NCBI GenBank assembly: GCA_026770705.1
Contig: JANJGN010000071.1
Coordinates: forward strand, 1,488,001 to 1,552,000
Length of the DNA stretch: 64,000 nucleotides
Source: Isurus oxyrinchus
Taxonomy: Eukaryota
Direction: 5' to 3'
Shown: positions 1 to 52,510 of the stretch, one piece after another
How positions within the stretch are numbered: position 1 is the first letter of the stretch
How the letters are laid out: each line of letters begins with the position of its first letter
Position numbers and translations under genes: made by a program
Notes under the pieces: model-generated
What the model saw: only the letters and a program-made list of their open reading frames with translations
Told to the model about the DNA's origin: nothing
The model's database searches: none

Positions 1-426
1 AGCACATACATAATGACAATGACTGCTATCATAACTCCTAAAATTCCTAATTAACATGACTCCCAGTTACACTCCCTTTAAGGCAACAGACCAAAAATAG
101 ATGTTAGATTTAAAACAAAATCAGCAAGTTAACCCAATGCCCCGGACAGTGGAATTCCAAATGCATTTTCCCCAACTTCAGTTCTGTTGGAGAGCAGACT
201 TCTGCACAAACAGGGTCCTGAGGACCATGAACCAATGTAGAATGAACTTTTCCACTTTTGTGTCCAGGATTCTCTTCCATCCGGTGTGATACCTTGTGGA
301 GTTCATTGTGTGTCCTGTAGATGGTCCACACTGCAGCCACTGTGCCCCAGTGATGGAGGGGGTGGATATCGAGTCTAGTGGATCAACAAAACATCCAGAG
401 TTAAATATTGATATTTCTCTCCCCAG

Positions 427-804
427 TTGGATTGTCACAAGAGTGGAAAGGTGACACTCCACGAGAGGTGACAGCACAGGAAGGTTCGTGTGTACAGATT
501 CCATGTCATTACAGTTATCCATCAGATTTGATAAAGAAACCACAGGTCGGATTCTGGAAAATGAGAAGATACATACGGAACAAATGGTCTAAATGGTCTA
601 TAGCCTTTCACTCCAAGGATCACAGTCGCGAGTTACAACGGTTCCGCCATCGGACCCGGCTGTCTGGAGACCTGAAAGATGGCGACTGTTCCCTGATTAT
701 AAACAACATCAGACGGGAAGATGCAGGACATTATTTTTTCATGATAAAATTTGGCAATCGTCCGAGCCGTAACGTTTCCCCTGAAACCCAGCTTCACGTT
801 TCTG
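427..804 (+). CDS. Siglec/CD22/MAG-like receptor gene A, N-terminal V-set Ig exon (intact frame; essential Arg replaced by Met)
   Basis: Acceptor ttctctccccAG ends at 426 and donor GTAAGT starts at 805; phase 1/1, 126 codons. Siglec-type V motifs: W..., GSCVQIPC, GFW, RTRLSGDLKDGDCSLIINNIRREDAGHYFF. Codon 741-743 is ATG where the paralogues have AGA. Confidence 0.9.
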
Positions 805-1029
805 GTAAGTGCTGTGTTATAATTACTCAACAATTCACATCCAACACTCAATGGGAAATAATAGTGTTTGATTTGCTTGTTTTTTGGCCGTGTTAACCAG
901 CGTCACTATTTTTAATGATTTGTCTATTTCTGCTCCCAGATCCATGAGCTTATTGTGTGTGATTGAATCCACATCATAGCTGTAATGTAAACCGAGCTGA
1001 GGGGTGATGACACCTCCCCCCTGAGTGAA

Positions 1030-26619: not shown

Positions 26620-29600
26620 GACAGAGAGAATGTGTGTGTGAGAGAGAGAGAGAGAGCAGAAGAGTGCGATAGAGAGAGATTGTGAGTGTTAGAGAGAGAA
26701 TGTGTGTGTGAGAGAGAGAGATAGAGCAGAAGAGTGCGATAGAGAGAGATTGTGTTTGTTAGAGAATGAGTGTGTGTGTGAAAGAGAGAGAGAGAGCAGA
26801 AGAGTGTAATAGAGAGAGATTGTGAGTGTTAGAGAGAGAATGTGTGTGTGTGAGAGAGAGAGAGCAGAAGAGTGTAATAGAGAGAGATTGTGAGTGTTAG
26901 AGAGAGAATGTGTGTGTGTGTGAGAGAGAGAGATAGAGCAGAGGAGTGTGATAGAGAGAGATTGTGAGTGTTAGAGAGAGAATGTGTGTTTGTGAGAGAG
27001 AGAGAGAGAGCAGAAGAGTGCGATAGAGAGAGATTGTGAGAGTTAGAGAGAGAATGTGTGTGTGTGTGAGAGAGAGAGATAGAGCAGAGGAGTGAGATAG
27101 AGAGAGATTGTGAATGTTGGAGAGAGAATGTGTGTTTGTGTGAGAGAGAGAGAGAGCAGAAGAGTGCGATAGAGAGAGATTGTGAGTGTTAGAGAGAGAA
27201 TGTGTGTGTGTGTGAGAGAGAGATAGAGCAGAAGAGTGTGATAGAGAGAGATTGTGAGTGTTAGAGAGAGAATGTGTGTGTGTGTGAGAGAGAGATAGAG
27301 CAGAAGAGAGCGATAGAGAGAGATTGTGAGTGTTAGAGAGAGAATGTGTGTGTGTGAGAGAGAGAGAGATAGAGCAGAAGAGAGCGATAGAGAGAGATTG
27401 TGAGTGTTAGAGAGAGAATGTGTGTGTGTGAGAGAGAGATAGAGCAGAAGAGTGTGATAGAGACAGATTGTGAGTGTTAGAGAGAGAATGTGTGTGAGAG
27501 AGAGAGAGAGAGCAGAAGAGTGTGATAGAGAGAGATTGTGAGTGTTAGAGAGAGAATGTGTGTGTGAGAGAGAGAGAGATAGAGCAGAAGAGTGTGATAG
27601 AGACAGATTGTGAGTGTTAGAGAGAGAATGTGTGTGTGTGTGAGAGAGAGATAGAGCAGAAGAGTGTGATAGAGACAGATTGTGAGTGTTAGAGAGAGAA
27701 TGTGTGTGTGTGAGAGAGAGAGAGATAGAGCAGAAGAGTGTGATAGAGACAGATTGTGAGTGTTAGAGAGAGAATGTGTGTGAGAGAGAGAGAGATAGAG
27801 CAGAAGAGTGCGATAGAGAGAGATTGTGAGTGTTAGAGAGAGAATGTGTGTGTGTGTGAGAGAGAGATAGAGCAGAAGAGAGCGATAGAGAGAGATTGTG
27901 AGTGTTAGAGAGAGAATGTGTGTGTGTGAGAGAGAGAGAGATAGAGCAGAAGAGTGTGATAGAGAGAGATTGTGAGTGTTAGAGAGAGAATGTGTTTGTG
28001 AGAGAGAGAGAGATAGAGCAGAAGAGTGTGATAGAGAGAGATTGTGAGTGTTAGAGAGAGAATGTGTGTTTGTGAGAGAGAGAGAGATAGAGCAGAAGAG
28101 TGCGATAGAGAGAGTTTGTGAGTGTTAGAGAGAGAATGTGTGTGTTTGAGAGAGAGAGATAGAGCAGAAGAGTGTGATAGAGAGAGATTGTGAGTGTTAG
28201 AGAGAGAATGTGTGTGTGATAGAGAGAGAGATAGAGCACAGGAGTGTGATAGAGAGAGATTGTGAGTGTTAGAGAGAGAATGTGTGTGTGAGAGAGAGAG
28301 AGCAGAAGAGTGTGATAGAGAGAGATTGTGAGTGTTAGAGAGAGAATGTGTGTGTGAGAGAGAGAGAGATAGAGCAGAAGAGTGCGATAGAGAGAGATTG
28401 TGAGTGTTAGAGAGAGAATGTGTGTGTGTGAGAGAGATAGAGCAGAAGAGTGCGATAGAGAGAGATTGTGAGTGTTAGAGAGAGAATGTGTGTGTGTGAG
28501 AGAGATAGAGCAGAAGAGTGTGATAGAGAGAGATTGTGAGTGTTAGAGAGAGAATGTGTGTGTGTGAGAGAGAGAGAGATAGAGCAGAAGAGTGTGATAG
28601 AGATTGTGAGTGTTAGAGAGAGAATGTGTGTGAGAGAGAGAGAGAGAGAGCAGAAGAGTGTGATAGAGAGAGATTGTGAGTGTTAGAGAGAGAATGTGTG
28701 TGTGTGTGAGAGAGAGAGATAGAGCAGAAGAGTGTGATAGAGAGAGATTGTGTTTGTGAGAGAGAGAGAGAGCAGTAGAGTGCGATAGAGAGAGATTGTG
28801 AGTGTTAGAGAGAGAATGTGTGTGTGTGTGAGAGAGAGGGGCAGAAGAGTGTGATAGAGAGAGATTGTGAGTGTTAGAGAGAGAATGTGTGTGTGTGTGA
28901 GAGAGAGATAGAGCAGAAGAGTGTGATAGAGAGAGATTGTGAGTGTTAGAGAGAGAATGTGTGTGTGTGTGAGAGAGAGATAGAGCAGAAGAGTGCGATA
29001 GAGGGAGATTGTGAGTGTTAGAGAATGTGTGTGAGTGAACGAGAGATAGAGCAGAAGAGTGCGATAGAGAGAGATTGTGAGTGTTAGAGAGAGAATGTGT
29101 GTGTGTGCGAGAGAGAGATAGAGCAGAAGAGTGCGATAGAGAGAGATTGTGAGTGTTAGAGAGAGAATGTGTGTGTGAGAGAGAGAGAGAGAGCAGAAGA
29201 GTGCGATAGAGAGAGATTGTGAGTGTTAGAGAGAGAATGTGTGTGTGTGAGAGAGAGAGAGATAGAGCAGAGGAGTGTGATAGAGAGAGATTGTGTTTGT
29301 TAGAGAGAGAATGTGTGTGTGTGAGAGAGAGAGAGAGCAGAGGAGTGTGATAGAGAGAGATTGTGTTTGTTAGAGAGAGAATGTGTGTGTGTGAGAGAGA
29401 GATAGAGCAGAGGAGTGTGATAGAGAGAGATTGTGTTTGTTAGAGAGAGAATGTGGGTGTGAGAGAGAGAGATAGAGCAGAAGAGTGAGATAGAGATTGT
29501 GAGTGTTAGAGAGAGAATGTGTGTGTGTGTGAGAGAGAGAGAGAGCAGAAGAGTGCGATAGAGAGAGATTGTGTTTGTGAGAGAGAATGTGTGTGTGAGA

Positions 29601-31350
29601 GAGAGATAGAGCAGAGGAGTGTGATAGAGAGAGATTGTGAGTGTTAGAGAGAGAATGTGTGTGTGTGAGAGAGAGATAGAGCACAGGAGTGTGATAGAGA
29701 GAGATTGTGAGTGTTAGAGAGAGAATGTGTGTGTGAGAGAGAGAGAGATAGAGCAGAAGAGAGCGATAGAGAGAGATTGTGAGTGTTAGAGAGAGAATGT
29801 GTGTGTGTGAGAGAGAGATAGAGCAGAAGAGTGTGATAGAGAGAGATTGTGTTTGTGAGAGAGAGAGAGAGCAGTAGAGTGTGATAGAGAGAGATTGTGA
29901 GTGTTGGAGAGAGAATGTGTTTGTGTGAGAGAGAGAGATAGAGCAGAGGAGTGTGATAGAGAGAGATTGTGAGTGTTGGAGAGAGAATGTGTGTGTGTGA
30001 GAGAGAGATAGAGCAGAGGAGTGTGATAGAGAGAGATTGTGTTTGTTAGAGAGAGAATGTGTGTGTGAGAGAGAGAGAGAGCACAGGAGTGTGATAGAGA
30101 GAGATTGTGAGTGTTAGAGAGAGAATGTGTGTGGGAGAGAGAGATAGAGCACAGGAGTGTGATAGAGAGAGATTGTGAGTGTTAGAGAGAGAATGTGTGT
30201 GTGAGAGAGAGAGAGATAGAGCAGAAGAGTGCGATAGAGAGAGATTGTGAGTGTTAGAGAGAGGATGTGTGTGTGTGAGAGAGAGAGAGAGAGAGCAGAA
30301 GAGTGCGATAGAGAGAGATTGTGTTTGTGAGAGAGAGAGAGAGCAGTAGAGTGCGATAGAGAGAGATTGTGAGTGTTAGAGAGAGAATGTGTGTGAGAGA
30401 GAGATAGAGCAGAGGAGTGTGATAGAGAGAGATTGTGAGTGTTGGAGAGAGAATGTGTTTGTGTGAGAGAGAGAGATAGAGCAGAGGAGTGTGATAGAGA
30501 GAGATTGTGAGTGTTGGAGAGAGAATGTGTGTGTGTGAGAGAGAGAGATAGAGCAGAGGAGTGTGATAGAGAGAGATTGTGAGTGTTAGAGAGAGAATGT
30601 GTGTTTGTGAGAGAGAGAGAGAGAGCAGAAGAGTGCGATAGAGAGAGATTGTGTTTGTGAGAGAGAGAGAGAGAGAGCAGTAGAGTGCGATAGAGAGAGA
30701 TTGTGTTTGTTAGAGAGAGAAGGTGTGTGTGTGAGAGACAGAGAGATAGAGCAGAAGAGTGTGAAAGAGAGAGATTGTGAGTGTTAGAGAGAGAATGTGT
30801 GTGTTTGAGAGAGAGAGAGATAGAGCAGAAGAGTGTGATAGAGAGAGATTGTGAGTGTTAGAGAGAATGTGTGAGAGAGAGAGATAGAGCAGAAGAGTGT
30901 GATAGAGAGAGATTGTGAGGGTTAGAGAGAGAATGTGTGTGTGAGAGAGAGAGATAGAGCAGAAGAGTGTGATAGTGAGAGATTGTGAGTGTTAGAGAGA
31001 GAATGTGTGTGTGTGAGAGAGAGAGATAGAGCAGAAGAGAGCGATAGAGAGAGATTGTGAGTGTTAGAGAGAGAATGTGTGTGTGTGAGAGAGAGAGATA
31101 GAGCAGAAGAGTGTGATAGAGAGGGATTGTGAGTGTTAGAGAGAGAATGTGAGTGTGAGAGAGAGAGAGAGAGAGAGAGCAGAAGAGTGCGATAGATAGA
31201 GATTGTGAGTGTTGGAGAGAGAATGTGTGTGTGAGAGAGAGAGAGACAGAGCAGAAGAGTGTGATCGAGAGAGATTGTGAGTGTTAGAGAGAGAATGTGT
31301 GTGTGTGTGAGAGAGAGATAGAGCAGAAGAGTGCGATAGATAGATATTGT
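26620..31350. repeat. About 4.7-kb satellite of 60-66-bp units built from microsatellite modules (agagcagaagagtgtgatagagagagattgtgagtgttagagagagaatg(tg)n(ag)n)
   Basis: Dozens of tandem units directly visible. Confidence 0.97.
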
Positions 31351-31617
31351 GACGACTAAACTCACTGAGAGAAAAAGCTGGACACCCAGCACAGGGAGTG
31401 AGGGAACAATGAATTTTTGCCGTGTTTGGTGAATCGGTTTGCGATGTCCCTTCTCAATCTCTCCTTCCTTGTCTTGACATTAGTTTATTCCCTGGTGCTG
31501 TTTAACTCCCTGAAAGGTGCCATTTAACCACAAGTTGTTGTTTGAGGAAGAAACGCTGGGGACAATTTATGAAAAAGTCTCTGTCTTTATCATTTCCATT
31601 TAGATGAGGAACTGAAG

Positions 31618-34372: not shown

Positions 34373-34759
34373 TTGTAGGGTGTGGTGGTGTGTGTCAGCT
34401 TCACCTGCGACTTCTGAGCCGTCTGAATCGCTCCCACTCCCTGGGTTCTAGACCTTGGACTTATTCGGGGCTTGTCACAAAGTGCAGCAGACAACTGGTT
34501 TTGGTGCAAGACAAAAACTGAGTTTACTGAAGTCACAAATGAACTTCTAACATTAGGATGACACTGAGATTATACAGACTTACAAAGTACACTGAGTTAA
34601 GAATGGGGAACACACGGCATAACGAGGGAGAATCACGCTACTAATGCCCTTACCCTTGTCCCACCCCCAAACCCTAACTAAATTGCACTAGGAGAGGTCA
34701 GGGGTCATGCTCACCAACCCAGGGTTCCTTGACAGTTGGAAATTTTGAGAACCCTTCAA

Positions 34760-35380
34760 GAGATGGGGAGGGTTACAGGGGCTGGAGGAGGTTACAGAGA
34801 TAGGGAGGGTTGTAGGGGCTGGAGGAGGTTACAGAGATAAGGAGTGTTGTAGGGGCTGGAGGAGGTTACAGAGATAGGGAGGGTTGTAAGTGCTGGAAGC
34901 TGTTCCAGAGATAGGGAGGGTTGTAGGGGCTGGAGGAGGTTACAGGTATAGGGAGGGTTGTAGGGGCTGGAGGATGACACAGAGATAGGGCGAGTTGCAG
35001 GGGGTGGAGCAGGTTGTAGAGATAGGGAGGGTTGTAGGGACTGGAAGAGATTACAGAAATAGGGAGGGTTGTGGTGGTTGGAGGATGTTACAGAGATGGG
35101 CAGGATTGTCAAGGCTGGTGGAGGCTTGGGAGATTATTAGGGTTACAGTGGCTAGAGGAGGTGACATGTATAGGGGTGTTGTCGGGCTGGAGGTTGTTAC
35201 AGGGATAGGGAGGATTGTATGGGCTTGTGAAGGAGGTTACAGATATAGGGAGGGTTGTGGGAGGTGGAGGAGGTTACAGAGATGGGGAGGATTGTAGGGG
35301 CAGGTGGAGGTTACAGAGATAGGGAGGGTTGTAGGGGCTGGAGGAAAGGGACAGAGAGAGGAGGTTACAGATATAGGGAG
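34760..35380. repeat. About 37-bp minisatellite, reverse orientation of 2085-2960
   Basis: (agagatagggagggttgtaggggctggaggaggttac)n. Confidence 0.9.
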
Positions 35381-36464
35381 GGAGACAGTCAGAGAGAGAG
35401 CCTCCAGGAGATAGAGAGCGATAGAGAGATTGAGAGACAGACAGAGACTGAGAGAGGGGGAAGAGAGAAGGAGAGTGAGAGAGAGAGAGAGCGATTGTGA
35501 AAGATGGTGGAAGGGAAGAGTGGGGAGGAGGGGGCCTGATGGTATTTTCGCTGGACCAGTAATCCAGAGACCCAGTGTAATGCTCCTGGGACCCTGGTTA
35601 GAATCTCACCACAGCAGTTGGTGGAATTTCAATTCAATAAAAACCTGGAATTAAAAGTCCGATGATGACCAGGAAACCATTGCTGATTCTTGTATTTGGG
35701 TCACAAATGCCCTTTAGGGAGGGAAATCTGCTGTCCTTACCTGGTCTGGCCTACATGTGACTCCAGACCCACAGCAATGTGGTTCACTTTTAAAAAGTGG
35801 CCTCTGAACAAGGGCAATTAGGGTTGGGCAATAAATGCTGGCCTAGGCAGTGATGTCCACATCACATGAAAGAATGAAATAAAAGGACAGAGAGGGACAG
35901 ACAGAGTCGAGAGACACCCAGAATGAAAAAAAACACAGTAAACACTGGAAAATAAACATTCTGGTCTGATCTGGTCTTGTATACCTTCAAATGGAACACC
36001 AGTAAAACAGGGAAATAAGAGTACTGGGCCAAACTGTTAGAGAGGGGCACATTTAGAGAGAGAGAGAGAGAGAGAAAGAGGGAGACACTGAAAGAGATAA
36101 GGACATGGAAAGAAAGAGTGAGAGAGAGAGACAGACAGAGACACACAAAGAAGTAGAAAGAAAGTGATAGAGATGAAGCAGGAGAGAATGAGGAGAAAGA
36201 TAGATAGATAGAGAGAGAGGATGGTAGAGAAAGAGAACGAGAGGAAAAGAGACAAAGGCAGAATGTGATGGAACACTGAATCCTTGTCTATGCATTTTGA
36301 AATCCAGCCCAGAACTATCATTGGAAGATTCAGCGAGTGTCCAGTACAGGGGACCCAGCCCAACCTTCTCATCCTGACCTTCCCAGTGGGGCTGAAGAGG
36401 GCAGAGAGGAAACCTTCCTCTGTTATTCTGTTGTCGAATAAACACAACAATTCTGGAACTCTGC

Positions 36465-37060
36465 CCTTTCTATCTCACGGATTAGAATATAAGGGGGCAG
36501 AGGTCATGCTTCAGTCTACATAAAGCCCTGGCTAGACCACACCTGGAGTCACTGTGAGACATTCTGGGCCCCACACCTTAGGAAGGATATATTGACCTCG
36601 GAGGGAGAGCAGTGTCAGTTTACCAGAATGAGACTGGGACTCCAAGGGTTAAATCACAAGGAGAGATTAAACACAAACTCGGCTTGTATTCCCTGGAAGT
36701 TAGAATGTTAAGCAGGAGATTTGATGAAAGTTCGCATGATAATAAGGGGAACAGATCGGGGGCGATAAAGAGAAACCATTTCCCCTGGTTGGGGGGAGTC
36801 TGGGACTCAGGGTCAGAGCCTAAAAAGGAATTAAATTAGGAAGTACAAAGGGTGGGAGAAATTTGGAACTCTCTTCCCCAAACAGGAACTGATGCACGAT
36901 CAAGTTGTTCATTTTAAACCTGTGAGACTGATAGATTTTTGTTATCCAAAGGTATTAAAGGAGATGGGACAAAGCCATATGGGGCTAGTTTGCAGATCAG
37001 CCATGATCTCATTGAATGGTGGAGCAGGCTCGAGGGGCCAAATGGCCTCCTCCTACCCTC
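36465..37060 (+). mobile_element. CR1-like LINE 3' fragment
   Basis: GLEYK, RPHLE and WAPHLRKDI remnants; tail gatcagccatgatctcattgaatggtggagcaggctcgagggg. Confidence 0.75.
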
Positions 37061-37620
37061 ATGTAATAGAAACTTACCTGTCAGAAGCCAGTTTATGTTG
37101 ATGTGAGTCTGAGTCGATGACTGAACCCAGTTGGTAACTTGTTCCATACAAAGCAAGAACGTTCATGCCCTTCAATGTTCCTGGATAAACCATGAACAAA
37201 GCTGGTGACAGACAGTCTCCACATGGTAAACAGTTAACCCCTAAACCTCAGCGTAAATCAGTTCCCCCTCGAGGCCCCTTGTCCAAAATAAAAGCAACGC
37301 ACACAATTTGTAAAATAGTAAGTGTAGCAATGAGAGGAGTAAGGGGTTAGAGGGCATGCGGTTCACCTGATTTGCCGACATAAGAACCAGCCCCTATGTT
37401 TTTGCTATGTTGTGTTGCGTCAATATGAACACATATCTGCACAAGGTGAAGGGCGTTGCGGAGGGACTGATAGTTCTCGGTGCCAGACAGTCAATGTCCC
37501 AGTGACCTTACTGCTGGTCCCAGGCCAGTGGGACAGGGAACATCGACACTGCAATATCCAGAAATGGGTGTGATACCACACAGCTACCCACCCGCGGCTG
37601 TCCCCTTCAAGTGTTTCAGG

Positions 37621-37628
37621 TATAAGAG
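37621..37628 (+). promoter_or_regulatory. Candidate TATA box of the hepcidin-like gene
   Basis: TATAAGAG 77 nt upstream of the ATG, consistent with a short 5' UTR. Confidence 0.55.
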
Positions 37629-37697
37629 CAGGAAGCTCCTCTAGTTACAAACCAAAGCATCAAAGCAGAGCCAGAAGATCAGAAGAGACAGGCAGAG

Positions 37698-37790
37698 ATG
37701 GGAAGCTCCCAGATGAAATGGCGACTTGTCTTGTTCACTCTGACTTTGCTGCTCTCCCTGCAGCTGAGTCACTTCTTCTCCTTGTCGAGG
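37698..37790 (+). CDS. HAMP: Hepcidin-like gene exon 1 (signal peptide MGSSQMKWRLVLFTLTLLLSLQLSHFFSLSR)
   Basis: Strong Kozak context (gagATGG), hydrophobic signal peptide, 93 nt, phase-0 donor AGG|GTAAGC. Confidence 0.85.
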
Positions 37791-37989
37791 GTAAGCTAAG
37801 AGATGTCCCTCTGGGTGAGGTGTTTCTTGCACATGACTCTACGTCTACCACCCAGATAGACTGGTCTCTTCCGCAGTTTGATATTATTATGTTCGTGCCT
37901 TTAATATTGTCGCCCTCTATGAATTTAACATCATTTCCTTCTGTCGTTTCCCCTGAAATTCTCATTCTTGTTTTCAATCCCTCCTCAGC

Positions 37990-38850
37990 CACTCCCTATC
38001 TCTGTAACCTCCACCAGGCCTTACAACCCTCCCTATCTCTGTAACCTCCTCCAGCCCCTACACCCCTCCCTATCTCTGTAACCTCCTCCAGCCGCTACAA
38101 CCCTCCCTATATCTGTAACCTCCTCCAGCCCCTACAACAATCCCTATCTCTGTAACTTCCTCCAGCCCCTACAACTGTCCCTATCTCCGTAACCTCCTCC
38201 AGCCCCTACAACCCTCCCTATCTCTGAAACCTCCTCCAGCCCCTATAAACCTCCCTATCTCTGTAACCTCCTCCAGCCCCTACAACCCTACCTATCTCTG
38301 TAACCTCCCCCAGGCCCCACAACCCTCATGATCACTGTAACCTCCTCTAGACCCTACAACCCTCCCTATCTCTGTAACCTGCTCCAGACCCTACAACCCT
38401 CCCTATCTCTGTAACCTCCTCCAGGCCCTACAACCCTCCCTATCTCTGTAACCTCCTCCAGGCCCCACGACCCTCAGAATCACTGTAACCTCCTCCAGCC
38501 CCTACAATGCTCATGAACTCTATAACGTCCTCTCCACACTATAACTCTCCCTATCTCTGTAACCTACTATGGCCCCTACAACAGTATCTATTTTGGTAAC
38601 CTCCTCCAGCCTCTACAACCCTCCCTACCTCTGTAACCTCCTCCAGCCCCCACAACCCCCCCCATCTCTTTAACCTCCTACAGCCCCTACTCACCTCCCT
38701 ATCTCTGTAACCTCCTACAGCCCCTACAACCTTCCCTATCTCTGTCACCTCCTACAGCCTCTAGAACCCTCCCTATCTCTGTTACCTCCTACAGCCTCTA
38801 CAACCCTCCCTATCTCTGTAACCTCCTCCAGCCGGAACAACCCTACCTAA
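37990..38850. repeat. 37-bp minisatellite in hepcidin intron 1
   Basis: 37-nt period measured directly (38041 to 38078). Confidence 0.92.
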
Positions 38851-38859
38851 ATCTCTGGT

Positions 38860-39500
38860 CTGAGTCTCACTCCAGGGAATTCAGTCCCATAACGTCGGTC
38901 AACACTCCGTGCTGAGGGAGTGCTGGACTGTCAGAGGGTCAGTAGTGTGGAAGTGTTGCACTATTGGAGGGACAGTACTGAGTGAGTGCTATACTGTCGG
39001 AGGTCAGTACTGAGGAAGTGCTGCATTGTTACAGGGTCAGTACTGTGGAAGTGTTGCACTGTCGGAGGGTCAGTACTGAGGTAGCGCTGCACTGACGGAG
39101 GGACAATACTGTGGGAGTGCAGCACTATCGAAGGGTTAGTACTGAGGGAGTGCTGCAGTGTCAAAGGGTTAGTACTGAGGGAGCACAACAATGTTGAATG
39201 AGACATTAAACCGAGTCCCCCGTCTGCCCTCTCGGGCGGGTGTGAAAGATCCCACAGCCACTATTTGGAGGAAGAGCAGGGGGTGTTCTCCCCGGTGTCC
39301 TGGGACCAATATTTATCCCTCACCCAACATCACCAAAAGCAGATGATCTAGGCCATGATCACATTGCTATTTGTGGGATCTTGCTGTGCACAAATCAGCT
39401 GCCACATTTCCTACAGTGTGAGTGCACTTCAAAAACATCCTTCAGTGGCTGTGAAATGCTTTGGGATGTGGTGAAAGGCGTTAGAGAAATGCAAGTCTGT
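38860..39500 (+). mobile_element. DeuSINE (SacSINE1-like) with an internally amplified 30-bp unit
   Basis: The minisatellite runs directly into tgagacattaaaccgag...aaagatcccac...atttatccctca...gtgaaaggcg..agaaatgcaagt, the Deu-domain body and tail. Confidence 0.75.
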
Positions 39501-39597
39501 CCTCCTCCCCCTCTCTCTCCTGTACCTCTCTCTCTCTCTCTCCCTCTCCCTCAATCCTCCTCTCACTTTCTCCCTGATAAATTCTTTCTTTTTGCAG

Positions 39598-39654
39598 GTT
39601 GACACTGCTTTAGGTTCTTCGACGATTGAGAAATCTGTGGATTCCCCGGACACG
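39598..39654 (+). CDS. HAMP: Hepcidin-like gene exon 2 (pro-region VDTALGSSTIEKSVDSPDT)
   Basis: Long polypyrimidine tract plus ttgcAG acceptor, ACG|GTAGGT donor, 57 nt; only phase 0 is open. Confidence 0.8.
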
Positions 39655-40926
39655 GTAGGTGGAAATTCATTCCTTATTTTAAGGTTTCTCCCTGCTCGTT
39701 TCTTCCACAGAAAGTTTTCTGATTTCAAGCTGATTTCAGTGGCAGTCTGTCTCGGTTATACTCAGGAGGCATGTTTGAAATCGAGCCCCCCCACCCCTCA
39801 ATTTTTTTGCAAAGCTGGGAAGAGGCAATTCCAAGGAAGTGAACATATCCCCACAGGAATTTTAAATGTAACCCACGCCGGGAATAGTGAGAGGGAGACT
39901 GATCCAGCCTGGGAGTGGGTTAAAGAGAGGCTGGGAGTCGAGAGTCGGAGAGAGGGATGGAATGGGGGAGGGAGGGATTGGAAGAGAGAGACACAGAGTG
40001 GGACGGGGAGGGGTGAAAGGGAAAGAACATAGGTGGGAGAGAGTGACAGAGGGAGAAATTAAAGAGATGCAGAGTGAGGGAAAGTGAAAAGGGAAGAGAG
40101 ATTGTCCAAGAGAGAGAAATTACCAGGAAAGGGAGAGTTACAGAGCGAGCGAAAGTTACAAAAATAGTGTGAGAGAGAGGGAGAGATACAGAGTGGGAGA
40201 AGGAGACAGGGGAGAGAGAGGGAGAGAGACAGGAAAAGGGAGAGAGGAGAGAAAGATTGGGAGAGAGGGCAATTGAGCGGAAGAGTAGGAGAGAGAGAGA
40301 CAGGGAGAGGAGGAGTGGAAGAGAGGAAGAGAGAGAGAGATATGGAGCAGGAGAACACCTCCTCCGGTCCCGATGTTCCTCCAAAATCTCTGACATTATT
40401 GCATCTCCCAGGTCCCCCTGATTCCCATCGCTCCACCATTGGTGGCCGTGCCTTCAGCTGCCTGGGGCCCTGAGCTCCGGAATACCCTCCCTTAACCTCT
40501 CTGCCTCTCTCTCTCTCTCTCCTTTAAGACGCTCCTTAAAAACTGACATCTTTGACCAAGCTTTTGGTCACCTATCCCTAATATCTCCATATGTGACTCA
40601 GTGTTAGACTTCTCTCTGATTTACGTTCCGGTAATGTGGGCTGGGACATTTTGCAATGTCAGAGGTGCTGTGTAAATGCAAGTTGTGAGTGTTATGTGGA
40701 AGGGAGACCCCAGGCGGCAGTCAGTGCCAGAGACTGGAGTCATTGTGTGCAGACCGTATCTAATCTCTCCGAATGCACAATCGGTTTGACTGTCAGCCAA
40801 AGCATTTTTGATATTTGATCCTTCTACCTGTTTATAACCAGGCCTACATCAAACACCGAGAGGCTGGTTAATCAACAGACACCTTAGAGGATCGAGTGAA
40901 AGACAAAGAGGACTTGCATTTCTCTA

Positions 40927-41058
40927 TAAAAACAAAGAAAACTGCGGATGCTGGAAATCCAAAACAAAAACAGAATTACCTGAAAAAACTCAGCAGGTCT
41001 GGCAGCATCGGCGGAGAAGAAAAGAGTTGACGTTTCGAGTCCTCAGAAGGGTCATGAG
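40927..41058. mobile_element. Penelope-like terminal repeat fragment with a collapsed palindrome centre
   Basis: Same sequence as 5214-5315, followed by gaagggtcatgag. Confidence 0.65.
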
Positions 41059-41319
41059 CACCTTCCAACACATCAGGACATCCCAAACTGTTTCGCAGAC
41101 AATCAAGTGCTTTTTTTCTTTCATGTGAGGTCACTGATGTACTGTGGGAAAAGAATCAGCCATTGGCGCACAGTAAGATCCCACAGACAGCAGCATGATA
41201 ATGACCAGCGCGCTCCCAGTACTTGCACTGCAAGTGTCAGTTCAGGGTGTCTGCTCAATTCTCTGCAACTCTCAGCTCTGAGTTAAAAGGACCACCAGAC
41301 ATAATTGAGAAATTACTGA

Positions 41320-41930
41320 GCTGTCGGAGGGTCAGTACCAGCGGGGGGGCAGGACAGTCGGAGGGTCAGTACTGAGGGGGTGCTGCATTGTCAGACAGTC
41401 AGTCTTGGAGTGCTGCATTGTCAGAGGGTCAGTACCGGCGGGGGACTGCACAGTCGGAGGGTCAGTACTGAGGGGGTGCTGCATTGTCAGACGGTCAGTA
41501 CTGAGGGAGTGCTGCACAGTCGGAGGGTCAGTACTGAGGGGGTGCTGCACTGTTGAAGGCGCTGTCTTTCAGATGAGATGTTAAACTGAGACAACATCTG
41601 CCCTCTCAGATGGATGTAGAGGATTCCATGGCCACAATTTAAATGAAGTGCGTCAGGAGTTGGGGGTATGTGTGGAGGGGGTGGTGGGGGGTGGATGGGA
41701 TGCAGTTATGTCTGCTTTCCTGGGGCAAACATTTATCCCTCAACTGACATTGGTAATAAACTGAAAATCGGGGCCATTATCACATTTCTGTTTGTGGGAT
41801 CTTGCTGTGCGTGAATTGCCTGCTGCGTTTCCTACATTACAGCGGTGAGCTCACTTCAGAAAAAGTCCTTCCTTCAGCTGTGGAACACTTTGGGCCATCC
41901 TGAGGAGGGGAAAGGCGCTATAGAAATGCG
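41320..41930 (+). mobile_element. DeuSINE with amplified 30-bp unit (hepcidin intron 2)
   Basis: Array followed by gctgtctttcagatgagatgttaaac... and the tail aaaggcgctatagaaatgc. Confidence 0.75.
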
Positions 41931-42018
41931 CCATCCTCCTTCCAATGACGCGCCTGATTGAAATGATGCCTTCTTTCTTTCCGGAATGTTCTCACCTATT
42001 GTCCTCCTGCTTTTCCAG

Positions 42019-42135
42019 GGCTCCTTGCTGCAGCGCCAGAAGAGAATGGGCAGACAGCAGCTCTGCAGATTCTGCTGTAACTGCTGTAATTGGAGAGAAC
42101 CAAATGAGACTTGTGGTCTCTGCTGTAGATATTAG
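42019..42135 (+). CDS. HAMP: Hepcidin-like gene exon 3: GSLLQRQKR / MGRQQLCRFCCNCCNWREPNETCGLCCRY*
   Basis: cttttccAG acceptor, phase 0; RxKR furin site; hepcidin 8-Cys signature C-x2-CC-x-CC-xn-CG-x-CC; TAG at 42133-42135. Confidence 0.93.
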   Translation, partial: GSLLQRQKRMGRQQLCRFCCNCCNWREPNETCGLCCRY

Positions 42136-42982
42136 ACCCTGGCCTCATTCACGCAAGGTCATCCTGCACCATGCCACAGCCTCTCCCCTCCTTATCTACT
42201 GCTTAGCAATCTATTTCACACAGGCCCTGTTCATTAATTCCAACTGAAACTTTACCTGCGTTCTACAGCAGGGAAAGAAGCCATTCGGCCCATCTGTTCC
42301 ATGCTGGAGTTTCTGCTCCACACGAGTCTCCGCCCACCCCTTCTCCATCTCACCCCATCACCATATCCTTCTATTCATTTCTCCCTCATGTGTTTATCCA
42401 GCTTCCCCTTAAATACATCGACTCTATTCACCTCACGTGACTGTGTTTGTGTCTGTCTTTATGAGCGTGTGTGTGTGTGTGTGTGTGTGACTGTCAATAT
42501 GTGTGTGTCAATGTGAATGTGTGTGATTGTGTCAGCGTGTGTGTGTGTATGTGTGACTGTCAGTGCGTGTCAATGTGAATGTGTGTGATTGTGTCAGCGT
42601 GTGTGTGTGTGTGTGCGTGTGTGTGTGTGTGTAACTGTGTCAGTGTGTGTCAATGTGAATGAGTGAGTGTGTCAGTGTGTCTGTGTGGGTGTGTGTGACT
42701 GTGTCAGTGTGTGTCAATGTGAATGAGTGAGTGTGTCAGTGTGTCTGTGTGGGTGTGGGTGTGTGAGTGTGCAAGTGAATGTGTGAGGAATCTTATGACT
42801 AAGTCATTTGAATGGATGTTACTGGGGTTAATGATAGTTAAAATTCAGAGTGATGTAAAGCGGGCTCCTGATTTTGCTGCTTTATGCTCCCAGGCACAGA
42901 TTGACCCCGACAATGTGTTCATGATTCACCATCATCTTGTCGGGACTTTAATTGTAAAGATTATGATTTGTGAAAAAAAATG

Positions 42983-42988
42983 AATAAA
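42983..42988 (+). promoter_or_regulatory. Candidate polyadenylation signal of the hepcidin-like gene
   Basis: First AATAAA I found after the stop codon; followed by a T-rich stretch. Confidence 0.4.
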
Positions 42989-44629
42989 CAACTTTTGTCT
43001 TCACAAAGTGTCTGGCTTGGTATTTCAGGCTACTTGTCTCCCCGTCACCCTCCCCCCCAACCATGCCCCCCACACCAGGGAACAATTGTCCCCCCTTCCT
43101 CTGAAGTTCTGGGTAAAGATCAGCTTTGTTCAATGCAAGCTGTTCCGACATCGAGAACGTTGTTACAAATATCTCACAAAGGGCACACGCCATGATAGCC
43201 CACTTTCAACAGATTTTACCAGTTGACCAGGTTGAAAACCTTTTCATAAACCACAACATAGGTGTTCAATTCTTGCTGCTGTTTGCTTAATGTTCTCATA
43301 ACTGCTATAACCTCTCTAGTTCCACTACATAACAACACAAACATAAATAAACAGAAGCAGGAGTAGGCCTTTTGGCCTCCCAAGCCATCTTGTCCATTCA
43401 ATTTGAACCTGGCTCCTGCTGAAAGTTATTTAAGTTGAAGCGATAAAGCCATCAGGTGCAGGGATTAAAATGTAAGCAAAGGAAAAATAATACTTAGACA
43501 TGAGATTTAAAATCAGTTTCTGTGAAGAATCATACTGAGGCCATTGCACTGGATTCCTTCTTTCCAGAGTGAAGGGTTTAAAACTAGGAGTCACATTCAG
43601 CAGCTGCGTTGTCTTCTCTAGTTGACTATTTGGAGGTTGCCTGTTGATGTGAATCAGCAGGTCAGCAGCTTTGGGGAGTGAGTGAAGGTCCCTTTTATTT
43701 ACAGGATCTGCCACAGGATGTGCAGGAATATTCCTGCTGAATTCTCCATCCTTGCATTCATGAAGGGTTTGAAACTGGAAGTCATATTCAGCAGCTGCAA
43801 TGGCCTCTGTAGCCAACTGTCTGGAGGTTGCCTGTACAGGTGGACTCAGCAGGTCAACAGCTTTGTAGGGCGGGGGGGTGCACGGGTAGTAAAGGTTCCT
43901 TTACTTTAAAGGCTCTGCCAGTGCAACACTTGATGATCCTGGGTCAAAATCATGTAACTCCCTCCCCAACAGCACTGTGGATGTGCCCTATGGAGGTTCC
44001 TTGGCTTCGACAAGCAGCCGACCAGCTCTGCTCTCAATTCCTCTTCACACTTGCTTCCTTCCTCCTCTGGTCTTTACTTTGTTATAGTGTTAGTGTCCGC
44101 TCTGCCTTTTTTGTTGCTTTCCCAATTCTTCCCACCAACTCTCTCTGGCTTGATCCTTCTCTGTGCTCATCTCATTGGTTTGGGTTTCTATCCGTTCATT
44201 GACCTGGTGTAATCTGAAACTGGTGCAATCAGGTAGGGGTGGGGGGGTTGGCGCTGGCCGTGGGTGGTGATACACGGCTACCTTTTTACCAAAATTCTTT
44301 CACGGGATGTGGACAGCGTTTGTTACCTGTTCCTGACTGACCCCTTGAGAAGGGGGTGCTGAGCTGCCTTTTCGAAGTGCTGCAGTTCACCTGGTTTGAC
44401 TGGTCTGTGGCGGGTTTTGATATAACTCAGTGGCTTGCTCGGCCATTTCAGGGGCCAGTTAAGAGTCAACCACATTGCTGTGGGTCAGGAGTCACACGTA
44501 GGCCAGAATGGGTAAGGACGGCAGGTTTCCTTCCCCAAAGGGCATTAGTGACCCAGATGGGTTTTTGCAACAATTGGCCTTAGTTTCATGGTCACCATTA
44601 CTGAGACTAGCTTCGCATTCCAGATGTCA

Positions 44630-45705
44630 CATCCAGTCGTGGACAATCAAACAACTCACTGGAGGAGGAGTCTCCACAAATATCCCCATCCTCAATGATG
44701 GAGGAGCCCAGCACGCCAGTGCAAAAGACAAGACTGAAGCATGCGCAACAATCTTCAGCCAGAAGTGCTGAGTGGGTGATCCATCTCGGCCTCCTCCGGA
44801 GGTCCCCAGCATCAGAGATGCCAATCTTTAGCCAATTCGATTAATTCCACGTGATATCAAGAAAGGGCTGAAGGCACTGGATATTGTAAATGCTCCAGGC
44901 CCTGAAAATATTCTGGCAATAGTACTGAAGACTTGTGCTCCAGAACTTGCTGCGCCCCTAGCCAAGATTTTCTGGAATTTTCTAGTACAGCTGCAACACT
45001 GGCAACTACCCGGCTATGGGGTACGTCCTGTACACAAAAAGCAGGACAAATCCAACCCAGCCAATTCCCCAGCAGTCTATTCTTGATCATTACTAAAGTG
45101 ATGGAAGGGGTCATCAACAGCGCTTGCAAGCAGCACCTGCTTAGCAAGAACCTGCTCACTGACGCTCAGTTTGTGTTCCACCAGGATCATTCAGCTCCTG
45201 GCCTCATTACAGCCTTGGTTCAAACATGCACAAATGAGCTGAACTCCAGACGTGAGAGTGACTGTCCTTGACATCAAGGCAGCATTTGACTGAGTGTGGC
45301 AAATCAAGGAGCCCGAGCAAAACTGGAGTCAATGGGAATCGGGGGAAAACTCTCCGCTGCTTGGAGTCATACCCAGCACAAAGGACGATGGTTGTGATTA
45401 TTGGGGGTCAATCATCTCAGTTCCAGGACATCACTGCAGGAGTTGCTCAGGGTAGTGTCCTAGGCTCAAACATCTTCAACTGCTTCATCAATGTCCTTCC
45501 TTCCATCATAAGGTCAGAAGTGGGGATGTTTGCTGATGTTTGCACAATGTTCAGCATCATTCACGGCTCCTCAGATACTGAAGCAAGTTATGTCCAAATG
45601 CAGCAAGACCTGGACAACATCCAGGCTTGGGCTGACAGGTGATAAGTAACATTCATGCCACACAAGTGCCAGGCAATGACCAGCTCCAACAAGAGAGAAT
45701 CTCAC
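44630..45705 (+). mobile_element. LINE RT fragment, degenerate
   Basis: KVMEGVIN, DAQFVFHQDHSAP, GVAQGSVLG, MFADVCT motifs. Confidence 0.85.
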
Positions 45706-48452: not shown

Positions 48453-48903
48453 AGTACTGAGGTAGTGTGGCACTGTCGGAGGTTCAGTACTGAGGGAGTG
48501 CTGCACTGTCGGAGGGTCTGAGCTGAGGGAGTGCTGCACTGTCGGAGGCTCTGAGCTGAGGGAGTGCTGCACTGTTGGAGGGTTTGAACTGAGGGAGAGC
48601 TGCACTGTCGGAGGGTTTGTACTGAGGGAGTGCTGCACTGTCGGATGGTTTGAACTGAGAGAGTGCTGCACTGTCGGAGGTTCTGAACTGAGGGAGTGCT
48701 GCACTGTCTGAGGGTTTGAACTGAGGGAGTGCTGCACAGTCGGAGGGTCTGAACTGAGGGAGTGCTGCACTGTCGGAGGGTTTGAACTGAGGGAGTGCTG
48801 CATTGTCGGAGGGTCTGATCTGAAGGAGTGCTGCACTGTAGGAGGGTCTGAACTGAGGGAGTGCTGCGCTGTTGGAGGGTCAGTACTGAGGGAGTGCTGC
48901 GCT
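48453..48903. repeat. 30-bp DeuSINE-derived minisatellite
   Basis: Directly visible. Confidence 0.92.
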
Positions 48904-49271
48904 GTCTAAAGAACATTGTACAAGTTTCACAAAATTGCATCTGATGCCTGTGTCTCATGCTAACATGAAGTTCATGCACACAACAGGAATATTTCTCGCT
49001 GTTTCTCTGCAGCAAGACAGCTTTGATATCACACCAGCCACTGGCAAGAGTGTGCAGCTACAATGTGACATGTTTACATTGGAAATTTCTATTATAAAGA
49101 TGGACAGAGGAATTCATCTGATTGGAAAACGTGACAACATGAAGTAATGTCTTTGAGCCAAGAATTTTGCAGCAAAATAAGAATTTTAATCTCTAAATAT
49201 CTACAGAACAGGCTGAGCATTTTAATCACTTGAGTTAATCAATGTAATTTTATTCATAAGCCAAATGCTTC

Positions 49272-49594
49272 TTACAATCTATCGCAGCATGAAAAAGGTG
49301 CAGCATTCAGAAAGCACATTCCAATCAGAGAACAGAGTTTAGCAACGTCACATTTCTGTTCATTCCTATTCGACCATGTTGGCTGCACACAGCCAGACAA
49401 TGCCGTGGTTATGATGTGTCCACACAGCAGGACTGGGGAGCACCAGGTATAAGGAAAAGTTTCAGCTTGCTGAGGAGAAGAAGGAGAATCTCTCGTTCCA
49501 GGTTTCTCTCCGTACATTAAGAAGCAGGCATGCCGATGTTTCATTGCACTCTGTCTGCTGATGGGAGTCCGCTTGGAAATTGCTGTTTGTGCTG
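49272..49594 (-). CDS. Candidate terminal cytoplasmic exon (no ITIM) of the activating-type receptor fragment
   Basis: ttattctttccAG acceptor on the minus strand below the TM exon; downstream sequence is homologous to the 3' UTRs of the ITIM exons. Frame is uncertain (phase 1 gives about 107 aa; phase 0 gives QHKQQFPSGLPSADRVQ*). Confidence 0.35.
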
Positions 49595-49604
49595 CTGGAA
49601 AGAA

Positions 49605-50215
49605 TAAGCTTTTCATAAATTGAGGGATTGAGTACAAACACAGGGAGGTTATGCTGAACATTTATAAACCTCTGGTTAGGTCACAACTAGAGTATTGTGT
49701 CCAGTTCTGGTCTCCTCACTTTGGGAAGGAAGTGAGGGTCCTTGAGAGGGTGGGGAGGAGATTGAGCAGAATGGGTCCAGGGATGAGGGATTTTAGCTAC
49801 AAGGTTGGGTTGGAGAAGCTGGGGTTGTTCTCCTTGGAGCAAAGGAGATTGAGGGGGGATCTGATCGAGGTGTACAAGATGATGATGGGTTTAGATAAGG
49901 CAGACAAAGAGAAGCTGTTGCCATTAGCTGATGGGACAAGGACTGGGGGACACAGATTGAAGGTTTTGGGCAGAGGGGGGATTTGAGGAGGAACTTTTTT
50001 ACACAGCGAGTGGTAATGAGCTGGTACTCTCTGCCTACGAGGATGGTGGAAGCGGAGACGATGAACGATTTCAAAAGGAAATTGGATGGACACTTGAGGG
50101 GAAATAACCTTGCAGGGATACGGGGATAGAGCGGGGGAATGGGACTGACTGGATTGCTTTACAGAGAGACAGCATGGAGTCGATGGGCCGAATGCCGTTC
50201 TTCTGTTCCATGATG
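49605..50215 (+). mobile_element. CR1-like LINE 3' fragment (partial inverted copy at 54712-54970)
   Basis: LVRSQLEYCVQFWSPH, RRLRGDLIEVYK. Confidence 0.9.
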
Positions 50216-50245
50216 AGATTGTTGCTGTGCAAAGCTTTAAACTTC

Positions 50246-50365
50246 CTTTCACTGTTTGTCTCTCCCAGACACAGACTCCAGTGATAGTGATAACCACAGC
50301 CACAAGGAATATCACAGCTCGTATTCCCAGGATCAGGATCACGTGCAGAATCTCTCCTCCACTGT
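50246..50365 (-). CDS. Transmembrane exon with intramembrane Arg (SGGEILHVILILGIRAVIFLVAVVITITGVCVWERQTVK), activating-type Siglec-like receptor fragment
   Basis: Minus-strand acceptor ttctctAG, phase 1; hydrophobic stretch containing CGA (50319-50321). The expected donor reads AAG|GAAGT, so it appears mutated. Confidence 0.75.
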
Positions 50366-52034: not shown

Positions 52035-52185
52035 GTTCCACACTGATGGTTATGAACCCATCCACTGCTCCATGTTCTTTCTCTGCCACACACTGATAGT
52101 CTCCAGTGTCCCTGGATGTAACATGAGGAATCACCAACCACAGCTCATTGTTGGAACTTGTTCTGTTCATTTGGACATTCAGATG
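52035..52185 (-). pseudogene. 5'-truncated second C2-set Ig exon (HLNVQMNRTSSNNELWLVIPHVTSRDTGDYQCVAEKEHG...ITISVE)
   Basis: DTGDYQC motif and phase-1 donor GTGAGT; the 5' half is replaced by unrelated repeat sequence with an in-frame TGA. Confidence 0.8.
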
Positions 52186-52510
52186 TCATGGCAGGAATCA
52201 AGAAGCCCGTTCACAGGATTACCAACAGAAAGTGAACAACAATTTATACTCAATGGGAAGAGAGTGCTGATTGGTTGGCAAGTGGTCTCTGATAGGTGGA
52301 GGTGTTGCCATGGAGAATGGTGTGTGCGAGATGTAAAGTTTAGACAGCTTGTCTCTTCATTCAGCAATAATCAAATAAAGATCAATTAACTTCTATCGAC
52401 TTTGAAGCACTTAGAGAGGCCTTAGAATGTGGATACAGAGAACGGGCTGCACTGTCAGAGGGTCTGCGCTGAGGGAGTGCTGATGTAGAATGAAAGGTGT
52501 ATGTAATTAC

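What the first reader, a model, noticed from the sequence alone, without database searches (positions are those of the whole stretch)
37698..42135. Complete three-exon shark hepcidin (HAMP)-like gene, invisible to the ORF track
Seen: exons 37698-37790 (93 nt), 39598-39654 (57 nt) and 42019-42135 (117 nt) have canonical GT-AG sites, all in phase 0. They splice to an 88-aa precursor, MGSSQMKWRLVLFTLTLLLSLQLSHFFSLSR-VDTALGSSTIEKSVDSPDT-GSLLQRQKR/MGRQQLCRFCCNCCNWREPNETCGLCCRY. There is a TATA-like box upstream. Established: vertebrate hepcidin genes have three small exons (signal, pro, pro+mature), an RxxR furin site and eight Cys in this spacing. Inference: this is a functional chondrichthyan hepcidin. 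Its tiny exons sit in satellite-filled introns, so automated annotation could easily miss it; I cannot confirm whether it has been described.
Basis: partly seen in the sequence, partly recalled or inferred. Interest (0 to 1): 0.92.

Follow-up and report, generated by a model that had tools for sequence, protein, structure and literature searches.

The report
Diverged shark hepcidin gene copy
This is a real, intact, correctly spliced three-exon hepcidin-family gene in a shark genome, but it is not the iron hormone itself: it is a shark-specific duplicate that kept the hepcidin scaffold and changed almost every other residue of the mature peptide, so it probably serves host defence.

Summary
Exons 37698-37790, 39598-39654 and 42019-42135 (+) have ATG, GT/AG, phase 0 and a stop. 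Exon 3 alone passes Pfam Hepcidin (31.6 bits, cut-off 27). Contigs of a public run of the same species carry both predicted GT..AG joints.

The interpretation needs correcting.
- Shark hepcidins are already in NCBI: catshark 'hepcidin-2-like' and basking shark LOC144671611. Their mature peptide, MSHLS[IV]CVYCC..., has the same 29 residues and the same 8-residue loop. The long loop is therefore a shark trait, not a peculiarity of this copy.
- This copy is a paralogue. Its prepro part is 52/59 identical to the basking shark protein. Its mature non-Cys residues are 4/21 identical. The S-H-L-S start of the canonical form is replaced by G-R-Q-Q.
- The same run also holds a canonical-type transcript (SHLSICMYCC).
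- Most transcripts carry letters that differ from this copy, so expression of this exact copy is not proven.
- The gene lies among Siglec/CD22-like exons, as HAMP does in mammals.

The scan has already found many near-identical copies elsewhere in this genome.

Best reading: a furin-processed, secreted peptide of the defence type, analogous to teleost Hamp2 but of independent origin. Function was not tested. The joined precursor was never submitted; all searches were made exon by exon.

The parts
37621..37626 (+). TATA-like box (TATAAG), 72 nt upstream of the ATG
   Evidence: It is the only TATAWR within 800 nt upstream. A role as core promoter is inferred; no read start was available.
37698..37790 (+). 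Exon 1 coding part: 31 aa, MGSSQMKW...SLSR. Two basic residues are followed by a 12-residue hydrophobic core, giving a signal-peptide-like start.
   Evidence: 29/31 identical to basking shark LOC144671611. The joint 37790>39598 is seen in 10 contigs of X1.
37791..39597 (+). Intron 1 (GT..AG), with a 37-nt satellite at 37992-38849 and a 33-nt array at 38912-39184
39598..39654 (+). Exon 2: 19 aa of the propeptide (VDTALGSSTIEKSVDSPDT)
   Evidence: 16/19 identical to P0003 residues 32-50. Joints are seen on both sides.
39655..42018 (+). Intron 2 (GT..AG), with GA-rich and 33-nt repeats
40842..40996 (+). Minor 155-nt cassette exon lying in an interspersed repeat. Including it shifts the reading frame.
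   Evidence: GT..AG joints 39654>40842 and 40996>42019, one contig each in X1. Sequence read.
42019..42135 (+). Exon 3 coding part: end of the propeptide, the furin site, the mature peptide and the stop codon
   Evidence: Pfam Hepcidin 31.6 bits. Best solved relative is bass hepcidin 1S6W.
42034..42045 (+). R-Q-K-R, a dibasic (furin-type) processing site
   Evidence: It aligns with REKR and RQRR of the annotated shark hepcidins. Cleavage is inferred.
42046..42132 (+). Predicted 29-aa mature peptide MGRQQLCRFCCNCCNWREPNETCGLCCRY: 8 Cys, an 8-residue loop, an N-E-T sequon and net charge +2
42136..43005 (+). Probable 3' untranslated region. The only AATAAA after the stop is at 42983-42988.
   Evidence: X1 contigs lie over 42136-42548 and 42736-43100. 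The end is inferred, because contigs cannot show an RNA end.
408..893 (+). Neighbouring Siglec/CD22-like V-set exon (context, not part of the gene)
   Evidence: Pfam V-set 48.4 bits and Ig_CD22 39 bits
52458..52859 (-). Neighbouring C2-set Ig exon (context). A near-copy lies at 61509-61967 (+).
   Evidence: Pfam C2-set_2, 33.8 and 36 bits

Best explanation
This is an intact member of a shark-specific hepcidin gene family. Three small exons give an 88-aa prepropeptide. Exon 1 supplies a signal-like start, exon 2 and the first nine codons of exon 3 supply a propeptide, and R-Q-K-R marks the cleavage site. The released product would be a 29-residue peptide with eight cysteines. It is a paralogue of the canonical shark hepcidin (mature MSHLS[IV]CVYCCGCCN.KG.KKTCGYCCKL). 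It kept the prepro part, the furin site, all eight Cys, the length and the 8-residue hairpin loop. It replaced 17 of the 21 other mature residues, including the S-H-L-S start that corresponds to the ferroportin-binding end of iron-regulatory hepcidins. It most likely acts as a secreted host-defence peptide, antimicrobial or immune-modulating, and not as the iron hormone. That makes it a shark counterpart of teleost Hamp2, arisen independently. Shown: exon structure, family membership, splicing, relation to the annotated shark hepcidins and the Siglec neighbourhood. Inferred: signal and furin cleavage, disulfide fold, loss of ferroportin binding and the defence role.
For: Exons and splice sites were read directly. 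Pfam Hepcidin is above its cut-off on exon 3 alone. CRFCCNCC...CG.CCR matches bass hepcidin 1S6W. A profile of shark hepcidins plus this exon finds human hepcidin 1M4F/6WBV at E 0.01. Both GT..AG joints appear in 10 and 9 contigs of run X1, whose intron contigs match the window with 0-1 differences per 145-360 nt, so X1 is the same species. Against basking shark P0003 the prepro part is 52/59 identical and the mature non-Cys residues 4/21 (Fisher p 1.3e-8). The two canonical orthologues P0003 and P0004 show the reverse pattern, prepro 38/59 and mature non-Cys 18/21. A contig in X1 follows this exon 3 up to 42048 and then reads SHLSICMYCC, so a canonical type coexists. Over those 30 nt, 12 letters differ, all in replaced codons, while the three Cys codons are identical. 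In sea bass, Hamp2 (HSSPGGCRFCCNCC...) has no QSHLSL start and, by that paper's title, does not regulate ferroportin, whereas Hamp1 does (PMC5665920). No GGCGCC or TTCNNNGAA element lies within 800 nt upstream.
Against: No function was tested. Phe at mature position 9 and Leu at position 6 are retained, so some ferroportin affinity cannot be excluded. Net charge is only +2, against +5 in the canonical form, which is not what a membrane-active peptide usually gains. At 3'-UTR place 42263, 96% of X1 depth carries T where the window has C. The deeper exon 2-3 joint carries T at 39653. Unique intron contigs differ from the window at about 0.5% of places, with the window's letter absent. The RNA may therefore come mainly from sister copies or another allele. 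Structure prediction gave low-confidence helices, not a hairpin. Tissue and induction are unknown because the runs are coded.
Confidence: 0.6

Rival explanations
1. It is still an iron-regulatory hepcidin. The shark ferroportin accepts a G-R-Q-Q-L start, and this multi-copy form is a second iron hormone or simply adds dosage.
For: The scaffold, length, loop and furin site are identical in layout to the canonical shark form. Hydrophobic Leu6 and aromatic Phe9 are kept. The contigs are very deep.
Against: The S-H-L-S start is kept at 18/21 non-Cys mature identity between catshark and basking shark, so it is under strong constraint there, and it is lost here. A canonical form is expressed in the same sample. 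Teleost Hamp2, with a similarly altered start, does not regulate ferroportin (PMC5665920). No BMP-responsive or STAT consensus lies upstream (a weak test).
Confidence: 0.12
2. This particular copy is a redundant or silent young duplicate. The RNA seen comes from near-identical sisters, and the copy has no function of its own and may be decaying.
For: The window's letter is the minority at 42263 (4% of depth). The exon 2-3 joint with the window's C at 39653 has depth 2475 against 13928 for the T form. Intron contigs differ from the window at places where the window's letter is absent. Earlier scan notes report many copies in this genome, some with a broken donor or a missing base (unchecked).
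Against: The frame, both splice sites, the furin site, all eight Cys and the stop are intact. Contigs with exactly the window's letters across both joints exist. No difference inside the coding exons was listed apart from 39653.
Confidence: 0.25
3. It is a chance open frame in repeat-rich DNA and not a gene.
For: The surrounding DNA is full of satellites whose translations are Cys- and Leu/Ser-rich.
Against: The Pfam score is above the cut-off. The exons are colinear, at 94% and 84% identity, with exons 1 and 2 of an annotated basking shark hepcidin. Spliced contigs carry both joints.
Confidence: 0.01

Closest known systems
Basking shark (Cetorhinus maximus) LOC144671611 isoform X2, 88 aa, named 'uncharacterized protein' in NCBI, Pfam Hepcidin (P0003)
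   Same: Same length and the same 31/19/38 layout. Exon 1 is 29/31 identical, exon 2 is 16/19 and the pro part of exon 3 is 7/9. It has the same furin-type site, the same Met at mature position 1, eight Cys in identical positions and the same 8-residue loop.
   Different: Only 4/21 mature non-Cys residues are identical. MSHLSVCVY becomes MGRQQLCRF. The loop NKKGTKKT becomes NWREPNET, which creates an N-E-T sequon. Net charge is +2 instead of +5. It is a paralogue, not the orthologue.
Small-spotted catshark (Scyliorhinus canicula) 'hepcidin-2-like' proteins, 88 aa (P0004) and 84 aa (P0005), in NCBI and UniRef
   Same: Same family and precursor plan. P0004 has the 29-aa mature peptide with the 8-residue loop.
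   Different: The prepro part is only 35/59 identical, and mature non-Cys residues 4/21. P0005 has a 4-residue loop. Both keep a His-containing start (MSHLSIC, MTNHSIC).
Teleost Hamp2-type hepcidin (sea bass HSSPGGCRFCCNCCPNMSGCGVCCRF; solved structure 1S6W)
   Same: The core CRFCCNCC and CG.CCR[FY] are identical. It lacks the Q-S-H-L-S-L start of Hamp1 and belongs to a family with a conserved precursor (PMC5665920). This is the model for how the shark copy probably works.
   Different: It is not an orthologue. The prepro part here is closest to canonical shark hepcidin, so the duplication is shark-specific. The loop has 8 residues against 5. Antimicrobial activity has not been tested here.
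Human hepcidin-25 (HAMP; 1M4F, 2KEF, 6WBV with ferroportin)
   Same: Three-exon gene, furin-type site, six residues before the first Cys and eight Cys. It sits beside Siglec genes: MAG and CD22 in human by my own knowledge, Siglec/CD22-like exons here. The profile match has E 0.01.
   Different: The loop has 8 residues against 4. There is no His at position 3 and no hydrophobic residue at position 4. No GGCGCC or STAT consensus lies upstream. The gene is multi-copy in this genome according to scan notes.

Membership tests
Hepcidin family (Pfam PF06446) | Sequence scores above the family's curated cut-off | tested here: met
   Exon 3 alone scores 31.6 bits against a cut-off of 27, E 2e-7, covering profile positions 24-52 of 53.
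Hepcidin family (Pfam PF06446) | Eight Cys as C-x2-CC-x-CC-loop-C-x2-CC | tested here: met
   Present, with a loop of 8 residues. All eight Cys are invariant in the alignment with three annotated shark hepcidins.
Hepcidin family (Pfam PF06446) | Three-exon gene (signal / pro / pro plus mature) that is spliced as such | tested here: met
   GT/AG at both introns, phase 0. Both joints are seen in contigs of run X1.
Hepcidin family (Pfam PF06446) | R-x-[KR]-R processing site directly before the mature peptide | tested here: met
   RQKR at 42034-42045 aligns with REKR and RQRR. Cleavage itself was not tested.
Hepcidin family (Pfam PF06446) | N-terminal signal peptide | not testable with these tools
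   Basic residues (K7, R9) followed by LVLFTLTLLLSL are seen by reading. No signal-peptide predictor was on hand, and the joined precursor was not to be submitted.
Hepcidin family (Pfam PF06446) | Beta-hairpin fold with four disulfides | tested here: inconclusive
   AlphaFold2 on exon 3 alone (pLDDT 71) and with a 4-row alignment (pLDDT 56) gave helices. Both models are low in confidence and were not used.
Hepcidin family (Pfam PF06446) | Position beside Siglec (MAG/CD22) genes, as for mammalian HAMP | tested here: met
   V-set plus Ig_CD22 exon at 408-893. C2-set exons at 52458-52859 and 61509-61967. USF2 was not seen in the window.
Iron-regulatory hepcidin (hepcidin-25 / Hamp1 type) | Conserved N-terminus x-[ST]-H-[FL]-[PS]-[ILV]-C that engages ferroportin | tested here: not met
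   The window has MGRQQLC. Canonical shark proteins have MSHLS[IV]C and sea bass Hamp1 has QSHLSLC (PMC5665920).
Iron-regulatory hepcidin (hepcidin-25 / Hamp1 type) | Binds ferroportin and causes its removal; transcript follows iron status | not testable with these tools
   This needs peptide and cell assays, and RNA from iron-treated animals.
Iron-regulatory hepcidin (hepcidin-25 / Hamp1 type) | BMP-responsive (GGCGCC) and STAT (TTCNNNGAA) elements in the proximal promoter, as in human HAMP (own knowledge) | tested here: not met
   Neither occurs in 36900-37697 on either strand. This is a simple consensus scan and a weak test, since shark elements may differ.
Teleost Hamp2 lineage | Descent from the teleost hamp2 duplication | tested here: not met
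   The prepro part is 52/59 identical to the canonical basking shark hepcidin, so the duplicate arose within sharks. The resemblance to Hamp2 lies in the kind of change, not in ancestry.

The most novel reading that the evidence does not exclude
Sharks evolved, independently of teleosts, a two-type hepcidin system. One type is a conserved iron-hormone form. The other is a multi-copy, strongly transcribed form whose mature peptide was remodelled under positive selection on an unchanged scaffold and precursor. The second type was amplified together with Siglec receptor genes, so the ancient HAMP-Siglec neighbourhood became a fast-evolving immune gene cluster.
Probability: 0.4. Interest if true: 0.6.

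Novelty: new variant of a known kind. Interest (0 to 1): 0.42.

Why it matters
Hepcidin is the master iron hormone of vertebrates. The split into an iron type and a defence type has been worked out in teleosts only. I found no paper on hepcidin genes of cartilaginous fish in the held library. The only mention is hepcidin detected in nurse shark plasma by mass spectrometry (PMC9207270).

Two points are useful. First, the canonical shark hepcidin already has an 8-residue hairpin loop. Second, sharks carry a paralogue that keeps that scaffold but not the hormone's N-terminus. Together these would date functional splitting of hepcidin as a recurrent event, and they offer natural variants for asking which residues ferroportin needs.

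For this single copy the value is modest. The family is known, relatives are annotated, and the scan has met the same gene form many times in this genome.

Tried and rejected
1. phmmer of the 38-aa exon 3 against 1.84 billion representatives. The only hit was P0001, a 577-aa translation of a tandem repeat and not a hepcidin. A peptide this short cannot reach significance in a library of that size, so the blank means nothing.
2. The search for homologous proteins with the open frame around exon 3 (41962-42132). No candidate shared three 5-residue words. I read this as 'no annotated protein with this mature peptide', not as absence of the family. The open frame around exon 1 then found the shark relatives.
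3. AlphaFold2 on exon 3 alone and with a 4-row alignment. Both gave low-confidence helical models that contradict the known hairpin of the family. I did not use them and ran no fold search.
4. Rfam on 36000-44000: nothing.
5. Promoter consensus scan: only the TATA box, a TCCAGAA half-site and a TGACCT half-site. None is above what chance gives, so none is claimed.
6. Supplement of PMC9207270 searched for the nurse shark hepcidin sequence: not held.
The exon structure and neighbours of the relative could not be compared.
8. Runs X5, X7 and X8 (organism B) laid almost only on repeats. X5 has one shallow contig with the exon 2-3 joint, which is weak support from a second species label.
9. Exon-wise searches replace it.
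Full report
**The observation**

- ATG lies at 37698, with G at -3 and G at +4.
- Donor 1 is AGG|GTAAGC after 37790. A pyrimidine tract and cag|G precede 39598.
- Donor 2 is ACG|GTAGGT after 39654. The acceptor ttttccag|G precedes 42019.
- TAG lies at 42133-42135.

A TATAAG box lies at 37621-37626. The introns hold a 37-nt satellite and 33-nt arrays. The window has a CpG observed/expected ratio of 0.28, as expected of a methylated vertebrate genome. It holds only one hepcidin-like exon 3.

Every search below used single exons, or the natural open frame around an exon, by reference.

**Is it a hepcidin?**

Exon 3 alone scores 31.6 bits against Pfam Hepcidin (cut-off 27). Its best solved relative is hybrid bass hepcidin 1S6W, with CRFCCNCC and CG.CCR identical and a longer loop. 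A profile built from exon 3 and three annotated shark hepcidins finds human hepcidin (1M4F, 2KEF, 6WBV) at E 0.01.

R-Q-K-R stands directly before a 29-residue peptide with eight Cys. Six residues precede the first Cys, as in human hepcidin-25 (my own knowledge) and in the sea bass Hamp1 and Hamp2 peptides quoted in PMC5665920.

**Is it expressed?**

Run X1 comes from the window's species. Its unique intron contigs match with 0-1 differences over 145-360 nt.

X1 holds contigs with a GT..AG skip from 37790 to 39598 (10 contigs) and from 39654 to 42019 (9 contigs). A loose end at 42018 spells the end of exon 2. X1's record does not say that it is RNA. The intron-less joints, a minor alternative exon and much deeper exon contigs than intron contigs all say that it is. 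Contig depth is a poor measure of level, so I claim presence and not amount.

Three findings limit the claim for this exact copy.
- A deeper exon 2-3 joint carries T at 39653, changing ACG to ATG.
- 96% of the depth at 3'-UTR place 42263 carries T where the window has C.
- Several unique intron contigs differ from the window at places where the window's own letter is absent.

The RNA pool therefore comes from several near-identical copies or alleles. This copy's own share is unresolved.

Contigs continue to about 43,000. The only AATAAA after the stop is at 42983, so the 3' UTR is probably about 870 nt long.

**Relatives**

The open frame around exon 1 (37626-37796) found NCBI proteins of the basking shark, LOC144671611 isoforms X2 and X3. 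These are named 'uncharacterized protein', and X2 carries Pfam Hepcidin. Searching with X2 found two catshark proteins named 'hepcidin-2-like'. Shark hepcidins are therefore already in public databases.

Their mature peptide is MSHLS[VI]CVYCCGCCN[KR]KG[TS]KKTCGYCCKL. It has 29 residues and the same 8-residue loop as the window's peptide. The 'doubled loop' is therefore a trait of the shark lineage and not a peculiarity of this copy. That corrects a note made on this window.

What is peculiar here is the pattern of identity.

| Comparison | Prepro part | Mature non-Cys residues |
|---|---|---|
| Window vs basking shark X2 | 52/59 | 4/21 (Fisher p 1.3e-8) |
| Basking shark vs catshark (canonical) | 38/59 | 18/21 |

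The hormone-like form is strongly conserved. This copy, whose precursor is close to the basking shark's, has been remodelled at almost every position that is not a cysteine.

A contig in X1 follows the window's exon 3 up to 42048 and then reads SHLSICMYCC. The same animal therefore also makes a canonical type. Over those 30 nt, 12 letters differ, all in replaced codons, and the three Cys codons are identical.

**Context**

A V-set exon that also matches the CD22-like first Ig domain lies at 408-893. C2-set exons lie at 52458-52859 (-) and 61509-61967 (+). The gene therefore sits among Siglec/CD22-like genes. Mammalian HAMP lies next to MAG and CD22 (my own knowledge).

Scan notes report many further hepcidin copies in this genome, some of them broken or fused to Siglec tail exons. 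I did not check those copies.

**How it most likely works**

The precursor enters the secretory pathway and is cut after RQKR. It would fold into the four-disulfide hairpin of the family, with a longer tip.

The start of the mature peptide is the part of hepcidin needed for ferroportin binding (my own knowledge). Here it reads G-R-Q-Q in place of S-H-L-S. Sea bass Hamp2 has a comparably altered start, and that paper's title states that Hamp2, unlike Hamp1, does not regulate ferroportin (PMC5665920).

I therefore read this gene as a defence-type paralogue of independent, shark-specific origin (confidence 0.6). Three things count against too much confidence. The net charge falls from +5 to +2. 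Leu6 and Phe9 are kept. Nothing was assayed.

**Novelty**

The held literature has no study of hepcidin genes in cartilaginous fish. Nurse shark plasma hepcidin was detected by mass spectrometry (PMC9207270). No protein with this mature peptide was found among 5.8 billion proteins.

This is a new variant of a known kind. It is of moderate interest, and the scan has met it repeatedly on other DNA of this genome.

**Limits**

Structure prediction was uninformative. Tissue and species names are coded.

Noticed in passing
window 40842-40996 (+): A 155-nt cassette exon inside an interspersed repeat is spliced between exons 2 and 3 in a minority of X1 contigs (GT..AG joints 39654>40842 and 40996>42019). 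It shifts the frame, so it is probably unproductive exonisation of a repeat.
   Followed up: partly
window 45185-45290 (+); weaker copy at 16979-17026 (+): About 3 kb downstream of the gene lies a match (86-88% identity, with one frame shift) to the alternative last exon of basking shark LOC144671611 isoform X3 (P0002 residues 51-87). Its ...LDIKAAFD end recalls a reverse-transcriptase motif (from memory, not tested). The annotated isoform may therefore be a splice into a transposon fragment.
   Followed up: no
window 135-374 (-): This stretch matches the 80-residue last exon of basking shark isoform X1 (P0006 residues 51-130) at 81% identity with one stop. It lies on the opposite strand, next to the Siglec V-set exon. 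It may belong to another hepcidin-derived transcript unit beyond the window's start.
   Followed up: no
window 49394-55190: A large near-perfect inverted duplication: arms 51522-52576 and 53658-54712 (1055 nt, 98%), continued by 49394-49872 and 54712-55190 (98%). It includes part of a Siglec C2-set exon. A further inverted copy is 52479-52946 / 61422-61889 (96%).
   Followed up: no
window 26455-31352: A 4.9-kb satellite with a 72/144-nt unit rich in GA and TG lies between the upstream Siglec tail exons and the hepcidin gene. Its minus-strand translation mimics Leu/Ser-rich signal peptides and gives many false tblastn hits.
   Followed up: no
window 55665-58139, 48456-48906, 38912-39184, 41321-41553; also 2082-2960, 34759-35345, 37992-38849: Two repeat families recur. 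One is a 33-nt unit (CTGAGGGAGTGCTGCACTGTCGGAGGGTCAGTA), up to 75 copies in one array. The other is a 37-nt satellite present in intron 1, at 2082-2960 and, inverted, at 34759-35345. Their contigs are very deep in all four runs laid, including those of the second species label.
   Followed up: no
run X1 at window 42048: A contig shares the propeptide part of exon 3 and then encodes SHLSICMYCC. This is a canonical-type hepcidin of the same animal whose gene is not in this window.
   Followed up: partly
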